A program made the position numbers and the translations under genes. This document shows, in pieces, positions 28,774 to 36,814 of a stretch of DNA of 64,000 nucleotides (the first letter of the stretch is position 1; each line of letters starts with the position of its first letter). Below the pieces are notes generated by a model. It was not told where the DNA came from. It ran no database searches and saw only the letters and a list, made by a program, of their open reading frames with translations. The DNA is from Haliotis rubra (taxonomy: Eukaryota): the NCBI RefSeq assembly GCF_003918875.1, contig NW_025766936.1, positions 1,054,001 to 1,118,000 on the forward strand, in the 5' to 3' direction.

Positions 28774-31700
28774 ATGGGTTCTCACGAGGATGACGGCTTC
28801 GTTGTAAGACTGCGAGGTTTGCCATGGGCAGCTACACCTGAAGAAGTTGTCCGATTTTTTGCAGGTTTGTAATGTAAACGTTGGTCTTCAGAGCTGGCTA
28901 AATATTTGTTTCAGTAGGATTTTTTTTGTCTTGCTAGTGCTGACTGTCTACCCAAATAATATAAATTTTATCATTCCAGCCTGAAATAGTTGCTCATGCT
29001 CTGGTAACTAGTTGCCTGTTTCATCCATTATACCACTTTTACTGATTGTTGATATAACTTGTAACTAGTCTTGTTAATTACTGAATTTCAGAAAATATTC
29101 AGAGACTTTCAGACCAGAGTGAAATACTGTTAGTGTAACTTAAAATTAAACTATTTTGAGGTCAGATAAAATCCTTAACCAACTCCTGTTAGTGTTGTCA
29201 TTGAAAGGTTTTGTTCTTAATATTATGAACTATACACATTTTGTTTTGTAGGGGAAGAAAACCCAGATGTTAAAGTTGGTAAGTAAAGAAAAAGGATCCA
29301 ACATTTTCATCAGGAAAAAAGTTTGTCAGGTTTCCATTGATTGATGATAGTTAAATGTTTTGAGGTGAGAGAAAATGAATAGACTTGTTTTGCCAGTTCA
29401 AAATTTTGAGCAAAATCGGTCCTCCAAGCATATTTCTGCTCATGGCTGCCACTGACTCCCCATCAGTAATGTTTTAGATGCCATATAAAAGTAAAGATCC
29501 TGAAGGAAATTTAGGAGGTCATTTGAATATGCATGAAACAGAATTGTAATTTTGAAACTTCATTCCAACTGGGAGATATGTTGTCCATAACTACCTGTAG
29601 ATTAGTACCATATCTATGTTGAATGTCTTCACACACTTCTTTGGGCAGGGTGTAGTGACGCAAGTTACTGTCATGGTCATTCAATATATGTTGTGACATT
29701 TTCAGTATTTGGGGCAGAAATCACAAAGTTTTAGCCACTTCAAATGGGGTGAGGAAGGATTTGTAGCTGCGTGTACATGTAACGGGGAAAATGTGTATAA
29801 ATTAGGATATGACTGTTTTCCTCAACAATAACTTTGTTTTTCCTTCAATTGAAGATCCGGAAAGCTGTGGAATACGCAACGTCCACTTCACATTTTCCCG
29901 TGAAGGACGTCCCAGTGGAGAGGCATTTGTAGAGTTCATGAATGATGACGATGTAGAGCAGGCTGTCAAGAAGAACAATGAACACATGGGACAGAGATAT
30001 ATTGAAGGTGAGATAAGGGTACACATACAGGTAACCACCATTGTATAGCTTTCTCACAGTTTTTTTGTCATAGAAATTTATCACTTGCTGTAGTATTTGA
30101 ATCTCCGGTCCCTAAAAGTTACATTACATACATGAACATGACAGTTATGACGAGACGTTTTGGAGAGAATTCCTAACTTAGAACACTGATACCTTATGGT
30201 ATGAATCTGTAGTGTATGGGAAGTATCACCTCAGCATTTGTTTTCAGTATTTCGGTCTAAGAAGAGTGAGATGGACTGGGTGATCAAACGGGCAGGGCCC
30301 AACCAGCAGGCACCCACCGAGGCAGTTGTCAGGCTACGAGGGCTCCCATTTGGCTGCTCCAAAGAAGAAATTGCTCAATTTTTCACAGGTATGTCTCTTA
30401 CTGTCATATACATTGCATTCAAATTTCTGTAAAGTGAATAAATAAACTTTGCAATTGTTAAAAAGTATTTTGTTAAAAAATATGAAGCTAATTTTGTAAA
30501 GTGTTTTAACCGAAGATGAAATGGGATTATGGTAAACACGTAATTGTCTGCTTGTGTAATATACAACTATGTATGTTAAATGGTGATAAGATCGATTCAG
30601 CGATGGAAAGCACTAAAATGAAGGGTAGTATTTCTTGATTGAGATGGATAATGAGGATCCATGAATAATACCATTACAACTCAGTTCATGGACAATGGAT
30701 TGAAGAATGAACAAACATGTAGTGCGAACTGTTAAGGATTGTGAAGGAATGGTTTTAAGAAATGATCTTTTGGTAATGGTTTTCTACGAGACTGTTTGGA
30801 AAGTACTGGCAATTGTTGTCTTTTGACTACCATGTCAGATGCATTGTTTGGGCTTGTTTGTTTGTGACTGCCTTCATTAGTCAGTGTTTCAACTGAACTT
30901 GTGATGTCCTGGCACTGCCGGCTGCTGACAAGATTCAAGGGATGTAATTGTAAACAACACATCAAACACCATTGAGGACAAGCTGCTTTGTAAACAATTG
31001 TCCTTTCTTAAATCGATCTTATCACAACAATACTAGAAGTTATTGTCATAAATGGTATCAGATTATGGATAACAAAAATTAAAATCTGTTGTAGGTATTG
31101 TCAGCCTTTTATCTCATTGGATTTGACAGACATGATGCATTTGACAATAATTCAGCACTTCAAAGAACATAACAAATTTTTGGTTTCAGCCTTGAGAAAA
31201 TTGTAATGAAGAAAAATGTTTTTGGTTATATAATTTAAAAAATCACACATTTGCATTAAATAAGTATATGAGAATCCAGATATGAAACATACTTCTGGCC
31301 AGTGACATTTTTGACAAATTGCATAAAGTTGATTGAAACTTTTGAAACCACTTCCAAATGGCTGGGTATCCTATTACTGAACATGACAAACGTTAAGCAG
31401 CAAAACAGTTTGACAAATGAAAGATAATTTTTCTCTCAGTACTCTCTGACTGGAGATATTTTGATTGGTGCTGCCAAATTAAAGTAACAGGTGCATACTG
31501 CGGACAGTTTACACACAACTACATACATGCTACTCTGATGACTACTTCATGTTCTATGTTGCACTACCATCGGACTGAGATTGCTATGCTCTGTTTTTGT
31601 TGGGTGGGTCTGTAGGGTTGGAGATTGTACCCAATGGGATAATGCTACCTGAGGATCGACAGGGGCGCAGCACGGGGGAGGCGTATGTCCAGTTTGCATC

Positions 31701-34380
31701 CCAAGACATAGCAGAAAAAGCCCTGGGTAAACACAAGGAAAGGATAGGGCACAGGTGGGAGGCTGGGCTGATGACAGCAGCGGGAGGGACAGTCGCGTTC
31801 CACCGTCTGCAACATCGCTAACTTTACTTCTTTCTCTTGGATGCTACTGGGCAGAGTGGGTATGGATGGTTGGGGTCCCATTGGGCCGGGTGGATGGTGG
31901 ATACAAGGAATCTTCTGTTGATGTTTGGAGTGATGGCAATAAATTTTAGACACTTGTGTTACTGTAGCCATTTGTAACTATTACCATTCTGTGTGATTGA
32001 TGTGTCCTTGTGTGATGTTTCTGATATATTAGGTTTGTCATGTAAAAGTACATGGAGAATAGTAAATACTGAAACTTCAATATATGTACTGATGAGAGAA
32101 GGGTTGAGTGGTGAGAAAGTTGTGTGAATGTTTTCAGTCTCTTTATTATAATGTGTAATGGATTCTTATTGAAATCCAGTGGTAAACAATTGATTATCCT
32201 TTGATAGTTGTGTAACGTGAAATTAAGCAATGACATCTATGTGATTAAACTGAATGTGCTAAGCTATGTGTTACAGCAAGGAACGCATTTGTTATTGTAA
32301 TAGATCATGTAACCAAGGTTATTGATTCTAATTGGGGAAAGCCATTGAAAGGAATCAGAACAAGAAGTCCCTGTTTAATATACAATTGCTAATTCTGTTA
32401 CGATGCTAGGATGTACATATATATTTTGTCCACAACTGCAGCATGTTGATTGGCACCTTTCAGGTACATAGAGATCTTCAAAAGCAGCATGGGTGAGGCC
32501 TACAACGCCATGGGCCAGCAACGGATGAGGCCTATGATGGGAGGGTCCATGGGACGCCCAGGGCCCTATGATCGCAATGACCGCTTTGGCGGCATGGGCA
32601 TGGGTAACATGGGAGGAGGTGGTGGAGGCGGCGGTGGTGGTGGCGGCGGCGGCGTCGGCGGAGGTATGGGAATGGGAGGATATGGCCGTGGACGAGGTGG
32701 CAGAAATGTTAAAGGTAAATAAGTCTGACGTATTTTCTGTTGCTGTAGTAATGGCATTATCTTAGTAAACAAAAGCTCAAAACTTTCACATTTGGGTGTG
32801 TATTTCTTATTATCATTGTTTGGTATTTCTTTTCCTTTTTTCAGGTTACTTTGAAGATGACTTTGATGATTACAGTGGAGGATATGGTGGTGGAATGGGA
32901 TTTGGGGGTGGAAACCGTCGAGGGGGTGGCGGTGGAGGAGGTGGTGGTGTCGGCGGCGGTGGCGGCATGAGGGGCAATAATCAGCGGGGCCGGATGAATA
33001 TGGACAGACCCCGTGGAGCCACTCCTGGCAGTCATTACATTAGTGACACTGGACATTCTGTACACATGCGAGGCCTTCCGTTCCAGGCCATTGAACAGGA
33101 TGTATATGATGTGAGTTCATAGAATACTTCACTGTACCAGTCACAAGCTTGGAACATCTTTTTTAGTTCTTTATTAGCACATGCAGTTCATGGAATTGTC
33201 TTCCATAAAATGTACAATGCTTTGCTTTGGCATAAAATGTAAAGCGATTATTTTGGATTTCAGTTCTTCAGCCCAATCCGCCCTGTGAAGGTTGAATTTG
33301 AATATGCCCCAAATGGTCGACCAACTGGTGAAGCAAATGTTGACTTTGCCTCTCATCAAGAAGCTGTTGAGGCTATGAAGAAACACAAGTCAAATATGCG
33401 TATGTATTAATTGGGTAGATGAAGGTTGTTGGAATAATACTGTCCTTTTGTTTAGGATAAATTAAGGTGTGAATTGGAACTTTACAAGTAATAACATTGC
33501 AGTGTTTTGGAAAGATACATGAACATTTGAACTATAAGTTGTAAACCAGTGGTAAAGGAGTATCTAGGATGTAAGACTCTGAAGTGTTGACATATAATTT
33601 CATGAAAGGTCTGAAACCAATAATCAGAAAACTGAAGTGTTAATGAATTTGTGTCATTTACTGTTACTTATAATGATGCATCCTTTTGTTACAGAGCACC
33701 GCTACATTGAACTGTTCCTGAACTCAGCTCCAGCTGAACGTGGGGGCGGTGGAGGAGGATTTGGCTCTGGGCAGATGGGTGGGAGTGGTTTTGGTGGAGG
33801 TGGCAACATGGGCAGTGGCTTTGGCAACTCCGGAGGTTATGGTGGGGGTGGTGGTAACTATGGAAACAATGGCAACAACTTTGGAGGAGGAGGAGGAGGC
33901 GGCGGTGGTTATCAAGGTAAGTCATACAAAGGTTCTTTAGTATGAATGACACAACAATAGAGATTCTGTTGGGTCCTATAATAAGGGGCAGTTTTTAGGA
34001 GCAGTCTCGCGTTACTGACAAATAATTGAGACAATAGGTTGTTTCAGTACAGACAACCTTTATGGATAACTACTACTTTTATTTCGTGTATGTGACGTTT
34101 CGGTACAGTCTTGTACCATTGTTCTAGCTTAATGTCATCTATACACTCTAAATTGCAACTCTAAGAAGGTTGTGTCAGGTTTGCCATGCTTAGATGATCC
34201 TCAAACTAAACACTAAATATTTACTGTGATTTACTCTTCCTCATTTTTGTTACAGGAAACATGAATAGTTACATGGGAGGTGGTGGAGGCGGCGGCGGTG
34301 GTGGTGGCGGCTATGGCAACAATATGGGTGGCATGAACAACAATGTAATGGGAGGAAATCCAAACTACACAGCATTCTGA
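28774..34380 (+). CDS. hnRNP F/H family protein (three qRRMs, Gly-rich linker and tail; glorund/HNRNPH-like)
   Basis: Exons 28774-28864, [29252-29278 candidate microexon], 29855-30007, 30248-30388, 31616-31754, 32464-32714, 32845-33110, 33264-33399, 33695-33916, 34256-34380, all phase-compatible. Motifs [96 protein letters not shown]. Confidence 0.95.
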
Positions 34381-35670
34381 AGTGAACGGCTGCTTATTGT
34401 GGAAAGTTTTATTTGTGACATGGACACAACATTAGCATAAACACTGCGAGCAGATATACAACACTTGACTGTCAAGTAATAGATGCGTTGCCTCTGATCA
34501 TTGATCCAGCTTCTCCCCCAGGCGTCAGTCAATGCTTATTCCATGTGTCAGTGGGAAGAATGACGGGAACATTGTCTTCACTTACGTGTTTGTCATGACA
34601 TCACCTTTTCTACAGTATACTTTTATGGGACACTTCCATGGCTTCAAATGGTGTTGCAGCCCTGTAACTGACTGGATTGACATCGTTTCATACGTGGTTT
34701 ACTTTTATGTGTACATAATATCAGGAACCTTTCTTAAATTGTAAGGGATATGAAACGTTTTAGGCCAGTCTGACAACTTGTATGATCATGTGTTGGAAAT
34801 TATATTGATGGAATTCTAAGTGTTTTATCTACTTAAAGTATTGCTGCACACATTGTGTTGTGTATGATCTTGTATTAAGGACTCAGCCTTGAACTAATCG
34901 CATCAGTGTATATTGACCATGTTGCATCACTTGCTGTACATCAGATAAACTGTATCTCAGTAAACACCTCTCTTTATGTAACCGTTTTTGTTGTTGTCTG
35001 TTACGGGGCCACCTCTTTTGTTATACAGTGGATAGAAAATCTGTTTGGAGAGCAGGCTTCTCTCGGCCATGGCATACCAGAAGCTAACAAAATATGGTCC
35101 TTGATGTTACAGTGTCAGGTGTTTGGCATTAGGAATATGTATAATGTGTCTGAGTGGCATATCCAAGTCCAACTTTGGCCTGGCATCCATAGCATTGCTC
35201 TCTAACTGGTGCAAATTGAATCAGTTAATGCATCCGCACACTAGGCATGAAGCTATTTTGGTCAACTGTGGTGTCTGTTGACAACAAATTGTATGTATTG
35301 TATCAAACAAATGCTGATGGTCTACTGGTTTCAGTAGTGCTGTTTTCATTATAATAATATGTAAATTATTAAATATCTTAGTTTTAAATATTTTGCCCAT
35401 ATGAATTGCTCAAAATATTCCCAAACATGTATTTTCTGCAAATATTCTTGGGAGATACACACAGAGAGACAAGAGTCTAGTGGCATTAACTTCATTTGGA
35501 ACAAAAAATGTAACGTATGTTATGGATTTACAACTTCTTTACAATTTACAACACAATGCTTCTGGGCTACTTCTTGCCCCTTCATCAGGTGAATGACAAT
35601 ATGAATATGAGCAAAGTATATAGAATGAACAGGAAGCCAGAGAGATAATATTACTGATTGAAATGTACAG

Positions 35671-36026
35671 GTGAGGTGAGGTGAAATTGGGTTTAACATC
35701 GTGCTTGAGAATATTTCACTCACATGACGACGTGCATGCGTGTGTATGGGTATGTGCGGCTGCTTGTACTAGCCCAGACTGAAGCTGGTTTTATAGTGCT
35801 AGCCCACTGAGATACCATGCTGCAGTGAAGCATGAATACCCCACTCAGACACATTATACTGACTCCAAGCCGACCAGTCCTTGCTGTACCCATTAATGCC
35901 GAGCGCCAGGCAGGGACCAACAAGTACCATATTTTAACGTCTTTTGGTATGACGGGGTCGGGGATCGAACCCGCGACCTTCCGCTCTCCGGGCGGACGCT
36001 CTAACCACTTCACCTCGGAGGCGGTC
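35671..36026 (-). mobile_element. tRNA-derived SINE, family A, second full copy
   Basis: Closely matches 8459-8814; 12-bp TSD TGAAATGTACAG at 35659-35670 and 36027-36038. Confidence 0.87.
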
Positions 36027-36814
36027 TGAAATGTACAGAGATCAAGCAGATAAAGTGATTGTGTTTTGATTGAGATGCCAAGAAACGTGTTGTAAATATG
36101 GAAGTTGAAATTCCATACCATATGCTGTTATGTTACCTTCTAACTTTTAAATGCCCATCAAGCATCTGAACAAAAAATATCATTTGAATTAAAGAAGTTA
36201 ATGCAATTCAAACTATACAGGGTACAAAGCATGGAAATGCTAGTTGCAGTATTATTGTGTAGGATGTATTTTTCCCCCATCATGTGCTTTTCTTGTATTG
36301 TTGCTAAACCGGCTTAAAACCATACTCACTCTGGAAATCCTGGATCTGTGGTCATATATTTGGGTCAGAGAAATTAAGTTTGTGTGGTGGTGGCTATTTT
36401 TTCCAGTTAGACTAGATAACTTATAGACTGCTTTCCTATCTGGACCATGCAATCCAGAGCATTGATCTGTGCAATTGCTGCATGAACCAAGTCAGCTTGC
36501 CTGATGATACAATCGTGTTGGATGCCTCTTACAGCAAGCATTCAAACAAATGGACTTAAGTTAAAGCTATGTGTCACTCAGAAATACAATTCGGGTTTTA
36601 CCGAATAGATCTCATATTGACCAATCTATTGTTCAAATAAGCCATTTTTAGGTCTTGCCAGCAAAGCACATATGAACTCATGAAGTTCATCCATATGCCA
36701 CCTATCCCCTGACTAAACAAATAGTAGACTGTGGTAGCTCATGCCCAGCTGTGAAAAGGATGATTGTTTTTGTAATCTGATCCTGAGGTATATTGACAGG
36801 GATGGCTTCACCTG

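What the first reader, a model, noticed from the sequence alone, without database searches (positions are those of the whole stretch)
31590..32475. hnRNP F/H 139-nt exon surrounded by G-runs: probable conserved autoregulatory AS-NMD switch
Seen: exon 31616-31754 is 139 nt (not 3n). Its pyrimidine tract is broken by GGG runs (TTGGGTGGGTCTGTAG|GG), its donor is weak (CAG|GTGGGA), and about 9 GGG runs lie in the next 140 nt of an otherwise AT-rich intron. Skipping gives ACA G|GT ACA TAG, a stop at 32469-32471, more than 240 nt upstream of the next junction. Retention stops at 31819-31821. Known: hnRNP F/H qRRMs bind G-tracts, and vertebrate HNRNPH1 autoregulates through skipping of the equivalent GLEIVPNG...HKERIGHR exon. 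Inference: the same feedback loop exists in this invertebrate, which would date it to the bilaterian ancestor.
Basis: partly seen in the sequence, partly recalled or inferred. Interest (0 to 1): 0.7.

Follow-up and report, generated by a model that had tools for sequence, protein, structure and literature searches.

The report
Conserved G-run-flanked hnRNP F/H exon
In the abalone gene for a splicing protein that binds runs of G, one frame-breaking 139-base exon is hemmed in by G-runs at both splice sites, a layout kept in many distant animals and matching the human self-regulating HNRNPH1 exon, though the predicted exon-skipped RNA was not seen here.

Summary
Window 28774-34380 (+) encodes a 516-aa hnRNP F/H orthologue with three qRRMs. 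Exon 31616-31754 is 139 nt. Skipping it gives TAG at 32469-71, 243 nt before the next junction. The first 140 nt of the next intron hold 9 G-runs, the densest spot in the 64 kb.

New here:
- In 17 lineage clusters from public genomic contigs, the orthologous exon is 139 nt in 15.
- Its donor is CAG|GTGGG in 14 of the 17 clusters.
- One or more G-runs sit at -25..-4 of the acceptor in 12 of 16 clusters (background 0.12).
- Downstream G-runs exceed the far-intron rate in 17 of 17.
- The sample includes a mite; the literature reports poly-G motifs around the human exon.

RNA contigs from two abalone species confirm every junction of the gene model. They show no 30388>32464 skip joint, but contigs drop rare forms. 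They do carry both introns flanking this exon, while four other introns have no cover.

Verdict: this is a real, deeply conserved cis-architecture of the HNRNPH1 exon-4 kind. Autoregulation is plausible (about 0.55) but untested, and the output may be intron retention as much as skipping. This is a new member of a known kind. The scan's earlier notes hold no matching finding on other DNA.

The parts
28774..34380 (+). Coding region of the hnRNP F/H orthologue. It has 10 coding exons and gives 516 aa with three qRRMs and Gly-rich linkers.
   Evidence: Model built and translated. Eight of the nine junctions are confirmed by RNA contigs in four runs; the last, 33916>34256, appears only as a loose end in X5. 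Pfam RRM_1 hits on three exon pieces.
30248..30388 (+). Upstream constitutive exon (141 nt, first half of qRRM2, ...[19 protein letters not shown]).
   Evidence: joints 30007>30248 and 30388>31616.
30389..31615 (+). Upstream intron (1227 nt), present as a continuous contig from exon to exon in RNA assemblies.
   Evidence: table 8: contigs 30360/30396-31643 in X1, X2 and X22. X5 covers it in two pieces.
31602..31608 (+). Two G-runs (GGGTGGG) inside the polypyrimidine tract, 8-14 nt upstream of the acceptor.
   Evidence: One or more G-runs at -25..-4 in 12 of 16 lineage clusters, two or more in 9 of 16, against backgrounds of 0.12 and 0.012.
31616..31754 (+). The 139-nt frame-shifting exon (GLEIVPNG...HKERIGHR, second half of qRRM2). 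It holds 5 internal G-runs.
   Evidence: The exon is 139 nt in 15 of 17 lineage clusters.
31755..31760 (+). Donor GTGGGA. It contains UGGG and GGGA, the two published minimal hnRNP H/F motifs, across the positions that pair with U1 snRNA.
   Evidence: GTGGG in 14 of 17 clusters. Minimal motifs from PMC1540728.
31755..31894 (+). Cluster of 9 G-runs in the first 140 nt of the downstream intron.
   Evidence: window maximum. Relatives L006, L007, L009, L012 and L085 have 7-10. No Rfam family and no unusual fold.
31755..32463 (+). Downstream intron (709 nt), present as a continuous exon-to-exon contig in RNA assemblies. The in-frame stop on retention is at 31819-31821.
   Evidence: table 8: contig 31727-32490 in all four runs. 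Stop position.
32464..32714 (+). Downstream exon (251 nt). TAG at 32469-32471 is in frame only when the 139-nt exon is skipped.
   Evidence: The stop lies 243 nt before the 32714 junction.

Best explanation
This is the abalone (Haliotis rubra) copy of the regulatory cassette known from human HNRNPH1 exon 4.

The exon codes for the second half of qRRM2. Its length of 139 nt breaks the reading frame if it is left out. Both of its splice sites overlap the gene product's own binding motif: GGGTGGG sits in the pyrimidine tract, UGGGA sits at donor positions +2 to +6, and more G-runs follow downstream.

Proposed working (inferred). When hnRNP F/H protein is abundant, it occupies these G-runs. That hinders U2AF and U1 at this exon, so the pre-mRNA is spliced slowly or wrongly. 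Either the two flanking introns stay in (stop at 31819), or the exon is skipped (stop at 32469, a predicted NMD substrate). Either way less protein is made, which gives homeostatic negative feedback.

Shown here: the anatomy, its statistical exceptionality, its conservation across distant animals, the selective presence of both flanking introns in RNA, and conservation of the protein's G-tract-binding residues.

Inferred only: binding by the gene's own protein, the direction of the effect, the existence of the skipped form in abalone, and its decay.
For: Anatomy and stops.

G-run density: it is the maximum of the 64-kb window, and the gene's other introns have 0-2.

Unbiased comparative sample. 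Loci were picked by the exon's coding end only, plus 9 fetched genomic loci. They form 17 clusters.
- Donor GTGGG in 14 of 17 (two more have GGG shifted by 1-2 nt).
- Exon 139 nt in 15 of 17.
- Downstream G-runs average 3.9 against 1.0 per 150 nt, higher in 17 of 17, Wilcoxon p=4e-4.
- Acceptor G-runs in 12 of 16, binomial p about 1e-8.
- Introns of relatives align only at these G blocks.

RNA. In four runs, two species and three studies, contigs span both flanking introns, while introns 2, 3, 4 and 9 have zero cover.

Protein. The best PDB matches are hnRNP H/H2/F qRRM2. RGLP[W/F] and RYIE are kept in all three qRRMs; these hold the aromatic residues F120 and Y180 needed for G-tract binding (PMC1540728).

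Precedent.
- Human exon-4 skipping, NMD, poly-G motifs and feedback (10.1101/686956; PMC13001508).
- C. elegans hrpf-1 and Drosophila glorund have NMD-targeted isoforms.

Control. The ESRP-like qRRM gene of the same genome has no intron at this place.
Against: - No 30388>32464 joint appears in any of four RNA contig sets. Contigs drop rare variants, so this is weak, but it is the only direct test I could make.
- G-runs downstream of a donor are classically splicing enhancers, so the sign of the effect could be the opposite.
- The dense downstream cluster is absent or weak in several lineages: L011 2, L013 1, L014 mite 3, annelid-like clusters 2. Two lineages lack G-runs at both splice sites (L060, L023) or have them only shifted.
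- C. elegans uses an exon that leaves two RRMs intact, so it is apparently a different exon.
- Intron cover rests on contigs, whose depth the tool says cannot be compared reliably.
Confidence: 0.55

Rival explanations
1. The G-runs are ordinary intronic splicing enhancers. They help define a small exon with sub-optimal splice sites inside long AT-rich introns. The exon is constitutive and there is no homeostatic switch. If the gene's own protein binds, it promotes productive splicing.
For: All four RNA contig sets show inclusion and none shows skipping. G-tracts near intron ends are described as aiding intron definition (PMC1540728 discussion). G-quadruplex or G-run elements promoting inclusion through hnRNP F are published (PMC5769772, listed).
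Against: The most conserved G-runs lie inside the pyrimidine tract and on donor positions +3 to +5, where they weaken the sites rather than flank them. Keeping weak sites plus compensating enhancers over such distances is less economical than strong sites. In human, destroying these motifs raises inclusion. Both flanking introns persist selectively in RNA.
Confidence: 0.28
2. The cassette is a regulated switch, but it is read by other factors or conditions (developmental stage, stress, temperature) rather than by the gene's own protein. C. elegans hrpf-1 is switched off at the L1 stage in this way.
For: hrpf-1 exon inclusion changes 65% to 0.1% between embryo and L1 and depends partly on the paralogue sym-2. 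Cross-regulation of HNRNPH1 by HNRNPH2 is suggested.
Against: Only one hnRNP F/H-type gene was found in this genome; the other qRRM locus is ESRP-like. The conserved motif is exactly the family's own binding motif.
Confidence: 0.12
3. The G-run cluster is compositional chance, a repeat, a hidden RNA gene or a structural element, and is unrelated to splicing.
For: None beyond the general G-skew of this part of the window.
Against: The cluster is the window-wide maximum and is conserved in position across lineages whose introns are otherwise unalignable. There is no Rfam match, the fold is no better than shuffles at z=+0.47, and canonical G-quadruplex motifs are not consistently present in relatives.
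Confidence: 0.03

Closest known systems
Human HNRNPH1 exon 4 autoregulatory skipping coupled to NMD (Pararajalingam et al., preprint 10.1101/686956; PMC13001508)
   Same: It is the same protein family and the same part of qRRM2. The exon is frame-shifting with a downstream PTC, and poly-G motifs lie upstream, within and downstream of it. Vertebrate-type fragments show the same exon borders and a GTGGG donor. That the human exon is also 139 nt is from my memory, not tested here.
   Different: In human the skipped isoform, its rise under cycloheximide, iCLIP binding and the effect of motif mutations are all shown. In abalone none of these is shown, and the only non-productive forms seen keep the flanking introns.
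C. elegans hrpf-1 exon 5 skipping to PTC and NMD (PMC2265522)
   Same: It is an invertebrate hnRNP F/H orthologue controlled by skipping of a frame-shifting cassette exon. The skipped form is stabilised in a smg-1 mutant.
   Different: The worm's truncated product keeps two of three RRMs, so the exon lies after qRRM2 and is apparently not orthologous. No G-run architecture was described, and the regulation is developmental.
Detained-intron control around a switch exon, as in mammalian CLK1 exon 4 (from my knowledge of Boutz et al. 2015 and Ninomiya et al. 2011; not read here)
   Same: The two introns flanking one frame-shifting exon of an RNA-processing regulator persist selectively in RNA, while the gene's other introns are removed.
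   Different: Nuclear detention and later splicing on demand are not shown here. The cis-elements there are not G-runs.
G-triplet intronic splicing enhancers (McCullough and Berget; from my knowledge; discussed in PMC1540728)
   Same: Clusters of GGG sit within about 150 nt downstream of a donor.
   Different: Those act in short GC-rich vertebrate introns and enhance splicing. Here the introns are 709 and 1227 nt and AT-rich, and the most conserved runs overlap the splice signals themselves.

Membership tests
hnRNP F/H (qRRM) protein family | Three quasi-RRMs with the loop motifs RGLP[W/F/Y], GEA[F/Y]V and [R/H]RYIE[V/I/L]F. | tested here: met
   The translation shows all three motifs in each of the three domains. 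Pfam RRM_1 hits exon pieces. The best PDB matches are hnRNP H, H2 and F qRRM2, E down to 4e-26.
hnRNP F/H (qRRM) protein family | Aromatic residues needed for G-tract binding (F120 and Y180 of human hnRNP F qRRM2; W20 and Y82 of qRRM1). | tested here: met
   The equivalent positions read RGLPW / QRYIE in qRRM1 and RGLPF / HRYIE in qRRM2. Their role is taken from PMC1540728.
hnRNP F/H (qRRM) protein family | Binds G-tract RNA. | not testable with these tools
   Needs EMSA, NMR or CLIP with the abalone protein.
HNRNPH1 exon-4-type autoregulatory AS-NMD cassette | Orthologous exon whose length is not a multiple of three. | tested here: met
   The exon is 139 nt and codes for the residues aligning to hnRNP H 128-172. 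The same borders occur in 15 of 17 lineage clusters.
HNRNPH1 exon-4-type autoregulatory AS-NMD cassette | Skipping creates a stop more than 50-55 nt upstream of a later exon junction. | tested here: met
   TAG at 32469-71 lies 243 nt before junction 32714, and four more junctions follow.
HNRNPH1 exon-4-type autoregulatory AS-NMD cassette | Poly-G motifs upstream of, within and downstream of the exon. | tested here: met
   There are 2 upstream, 5 inside and 9 downstream. The pattern is conserved.
HNRNPH1 exon-4-type autoregulatory AS-NMD cassette | A skipped isoform exists in RNA. | tested here: inconclusive
   No 30388>32464 joint appears in the contigs of 4 runs. Contigs drop rare variants, and raw reads were not available.
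HNRNPH1 exon-4-type autoregulatory AS-NMD cassette | The skipped isoform rises when NMD or translation is blocked. | not testable with these tools
   Needs an experiment or such a data set from abalone.
HNRNPH1 exon-4-type autoregulatory AS-NMD cassette | The gene's own protein binds the motifs and lowers inclusion. | not testable with these tools
   Needs CLIP, a minigene and manipulation of the protein dose.
Detained or retained introns flanking a switch exon | Flanking introns selectively present in RNA while the gene's other introns are absent. | tested here: met
   In one search, contigs span 30360-31643 and 31727-32490 in 4 of 4 runs, while introns 2, 3, 4 and 9 have zero cover. These are contig-level data only.
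Detained or retained introns flanking a switch exon | The transcripts are nuclear, polyadenylated and spliced later. | not testable with these tools
   Needs cell fractionation and a time course.

The most novel reading that the evidence does not exclude
The trio of a 139-nt qRRM2 exon, a UGGGA donor and a UGGGUNGGG acceptor is a self-sensing module. It was already present in the last common ancestor of molluscs, annelid-like worms, arthropods and vertebrates, and has been kept for over half a billion years. In molluscs its main output is detention of the two flanking introns rather than exon skipping. This would make it one of the oldest traceable autoregulatory splicing elements of an hnRNP gene, with the binding motif written into the splice sites themselves.
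Probability: 0.4. Interest if true: 0.65.

Novelty: new member of a known kind. Interest (0 to 1): 0.5.

Why it matters
Homeostatic control of splicing regulators by unproductive splicing is well studied for SR proteins, where the poison exons are ultraconserved only within vertebrates. Across kingdoms the mechanism is thought to be evolutionarily flexible.

Here the regulator's own binding motif is built into both splice sites of one frame-breaking exon. That layout can be followed across phyla in introns that are otherwise unalignable. It gives a compact, testable case for how old such a feedback loop is and which of its parts are essential. The donor and acceptor G-runs are widespread; the downstream cluster is lineage-dependent.

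It also bears on the human gene. The motifs mutated in mantle cell lymphoma appear to be the ancient core of the element.

Tried and rejected
- Rfam scan of 30300-32800 at E<=1 found nothing.
- The RNA fold of 31590-31910 is no more stable than shuffles (z=+0.47). Inverted repeats between the two flanking introns are short and AT-rich. I dropped an exon-looping or structure model.
- Canonical G-quadruplex motifs are present in the window only with loops up to 12 nt, and are not consistently present in relatives. G4 is therefore not a conserved requirement.
- The own-genome search for a second hnRNP F/H gene found only an ESRP-like qRRM gene on another contig, with no intron at the equivalent place. 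I used it as a negative control.
- ARAGORN on the tRNA-like stretch at 35.9 kb found no tRNA.
- Literature searches for an explicit report of this exon or G-run architecture in invertebrates found none in the held library. The published Blood paper (PMC7440974) is not held, so I used its preprint.
- I could not test the skipped isoform further. The one run search and the one read-laying run were used, and only contigs were on offer.
- I could not query full-length spliced proteins, because no reference exists for a spliced product. Named full-length orthologues from model invertebrates were therefore not fetched.
- Sequences set aside:
  - Mammal- or human-looking fragments (P0052, P0053, P0068, P0080, P0082, P0096, P0099, P0114) were not analysed further.
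  - Five mammal-type loci, possibly including one from a human gut metagenome, were also not analysed further.
  - Five other vertebrate-type loci were set aside after noting only their first intron bases.
Full report
**What is there.**
The window is a piece of the blacklip abalone genome. The tool reports G000 as 1,378,282,171 bases in 2,855 contigs. The published Haliotis rubra assembly has 1,378,265,264 bp in 2,854 scaffolds (PMC6774278). Earlier notes of this scan also call it abalone.

On the + strand, 28774-34380 holds ten coding exons that translate without a stop into a 516-aa protein. It has three quasi-RRMs and glycine-rich linkers. RNA contigs from four public runs show eight of the nine coding junctions of this model, including a constitutive 27-nt exon. 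The last junction (33916>34256) appears only as a loose end in X5.

The exon in question, 31616-31754, aligns over its whole length to residues 128-172 of human hnRNP H, which is qRRM2. The best solved relatives are hnRNP H, H2 and F. The motifs RGLP[W/F] and RYIE are kept in all three domains. In human hnRNP F these carry the aromatic residues whose mutation abolishes G-tract binding (PMC1540728).

**Check of the observation.**
- The exon is 139 nt.
- The acceptor reads TTGGGTGGGTCTGTAG|GG and the donor reads CAG|GTGGGA.
- Nine runs of three or more G lie in 31755-31894.
- Skipping gives TAG at 32469-71, 243 nt before the next junction.
- Retention of the downstream intron stops at 31819-21.

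This is more than chance would give. Nine runs per 140 nt is the highest value in the 64-kb window (top 0.06% of positions). The first 140 nt of the gene's other eight introns hold 0-2 runs. The rest of the same intron holds 2 in 569 nt. The donor is better called sub-optimal than weak.

**Comparative evidence.**
A word search with the open frame around the exon returned about 120 ORF fragments called on genomic contigs of many organisms. In nearly all of them the reading continues past ...HKE[R/K]IGHR with W followed by E, G, D, V or A. That corresponds to an intron beginning GTGGG.

To remove ascertainment by the intron, I scanned metagenome contigs with a pattern covering only the last 23 coding bases of the exon. 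After removing 15 chance hits and 5 mammal-type loci, 60 loci carried a qRRM exon. I added nine loci fetched around ORF fragments, one of which is labelled as the mite Tropilaelaps mercedesae. After also setting aside 5 vertebrate-type loci, the genomic examples number 56 loci in 17 clusters at 85% peptide identity. Ten further loci are spliced copies.

Results across clusters:
- The exon is exactly 139 nt in 15 of 17. One exception is cut by a contig end, and one is probably 136 nt.
- The donor is GTGGG in 14 of 17. The others are GTTGGG, GTTTGGG and GTTAGG.
- GGGA or GGGGA follows the GT within 3 nt in 13 of 17.
- At least one G-run lies at -25..-4 of the acceptor in 12 of 16, and two or more in 9 of 16. 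The background in distant intron sequence of the same contigs is 0.12 and 0.012 (binomial p about 1e-8 and 7e-14).
- G-runs in the first 150 nt of the downstream intron exceed the far-intron rate in all 17 (mean 3.9 against 1.0; Wilcoxon p=4e-4).

The dense cluster of 7-10 runs is limited to the abalone group and some others (L006, L007, L009, L012, L085). The mite, the TARA contig and the worm-like clusters have 1-3.

An alignment of the abalone region with five relatives of the same peptide type shows that the introns have diverged beyond alignment except at these G blocks.

The only other qRRM gene in the genome is ESRP-like. It has no intron at this position.

**RNA evidence.**
The four runs I laid (three from one species, one from a second about 91% alike in introns) contain spliced contigs, so they are RNA.
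- None shows a 30388>32464 joint. The tool warns that contigs drop rare variants, so this does not show absence. It is still the only direct test I could make, and it did not find the predicted isoform.
- What the contigs do show is unexpected. In all four runs one contig runs from the upstream exon through the whole 1227-nt intron into the 139-nt exon. Another runs from that exon through the whole 709-nt intron into the next exon.
- Introns 2, 3, 4 and 9 have zero cover in all runs, which rules out genomic DNA as the source.
- The word depth of the intron contigs is roughly 0.2-1.4 times that of the junction contigs in the same run. The tool cautions against comparing such depths.

The non-productive RNA that is actually visible is therefore the form that keeps both flanking introns.

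**How it most likely works.**
Published work on human HNRNPH1 shows the following:
- Poly-G motifs lie on both sides of and within exon 4.
- HNRNPH1 iCLIP signal lies on them.
- The skipped isoform rises under cycloheximide.
- Tumour mutations that destroy the motifs increase inclusion.

This fits negative feedback (10.1101/686956; PMC13001508).

In abalone the most conserved G-runs sit where they would compete with the splicing machinery: inside the pyrimidine tract and on donor positions +3 to +5. The donor UGGGA contains both published minimal motifs, UGGG and GGGA.

I therefore think the protein occupies these sites on its own pre-mRNA and slows or diverts splicing of this exon. The result would be intron-retaining or exon-skipped RNAs that carry early stops. 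Binding, direction of effect and decay are inferred, not shown. I give this explanation 0.55.

The main rival (0.28) is that the runs are enhancers compensating for weak sites on a constitutive exon. A switch read by other factors gets 0.12. Chance or an unrelated element is excluded for practical purposes.

I found no support for an RNA-structure mechanism, for a conserved G-quadruplex or for a known RNA family.

**Comparison with what is known, and novelty.**
The kind is known: autoregulatory unproductive splicing of an hnRNP F/H gene. It is shown in human, and NMD-targeted isoforms are published for C. elegans hrpf-1 and Drosophila glorund. The worm exon leaves two RRMs intact, so it is apparently not the same exon.

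I found no paper in the held library describing the orthologous 139-nt exon with G-runs written into both splice sites outside vertebrates. That is absence in a limited library, not proof of novelty.

I file this as a new member of a known kind. The added observation is that the core of the element can be traced across a mollusc, a mite, worm-like and insect-like metagenomic contigs and vertebrates. That core is exon length, a GTGGG donor and acceptor G-runs. Only the mollusc, the mite and the human literature case carry taxon labels I could check. The other lineages are unnamed contigs.

**Handling notes.**
They are listed by id under Tried and rejected.

Noticed in passing
window 29252-29278: A 27-nt exon (GEENPDVKV, frame-preserving) lies inside qRRM1 of the same gene. 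It is included in the RNA contigs of all four runs and both species, and no skipping joint is listed.
   Followed up: partly
window 31872-31890; L006, L007, L039 and L055 downstream introns (alignment A1): A short motif of the form GGGTCCC, 2-4 nt, GGGGCC recurs in the downstream intron of the abalone and four relatives. It sits at different distances from the donor (about +118 in the window and L006, +13 to +30 in the others). Its C-run could pair with neighbouring G-runs. The meaning is unknown.
   Followed up: partly
window 33908-34400: In run X22 only, one high-depth contig covers the last intron (33917-34255) together with the last exon. This could be retention of the last intron or an alternative 3' end in that library.
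   Followed up: no
window about 35880-36030, minus strand: This stretch looks like a tRNA-derived SINE remnant: the + strand reads GGGGATCGAACCCGCGACC, the complement of a T-arm. ARAGORN calls no tRNA there.
   Followed up: partly
L002 (G000 contig C1502, about 1301023-1301139): This is an ESRP/Fusilli-like qRRM gene of the same genome. Its ...HREIMGTRYIELF stretch is coded without an intron at the place where the hnRNP F/H gene is split.
   Followed up: yes
L060 and L023: Two divergent lineages keep the 139-nt exon but lack the architecture. L060 has donor GTTAGG and no acceptor G-run. L023 has donor GTTTGGG and no acceptor G-run. They are candidate losses that could serve as natural controls.
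   Followed up: no
proteins P0052, P0053, P0080: Mammal-type ORF fragments join the upstream exon correctly to this exon and then read on into the downstream intron. P0053 stands for 36 member sequences. This suggests that transcripts retaining that intron are commonly assembled in mammals too. They were left aside as possibly human.
   Followed up: no
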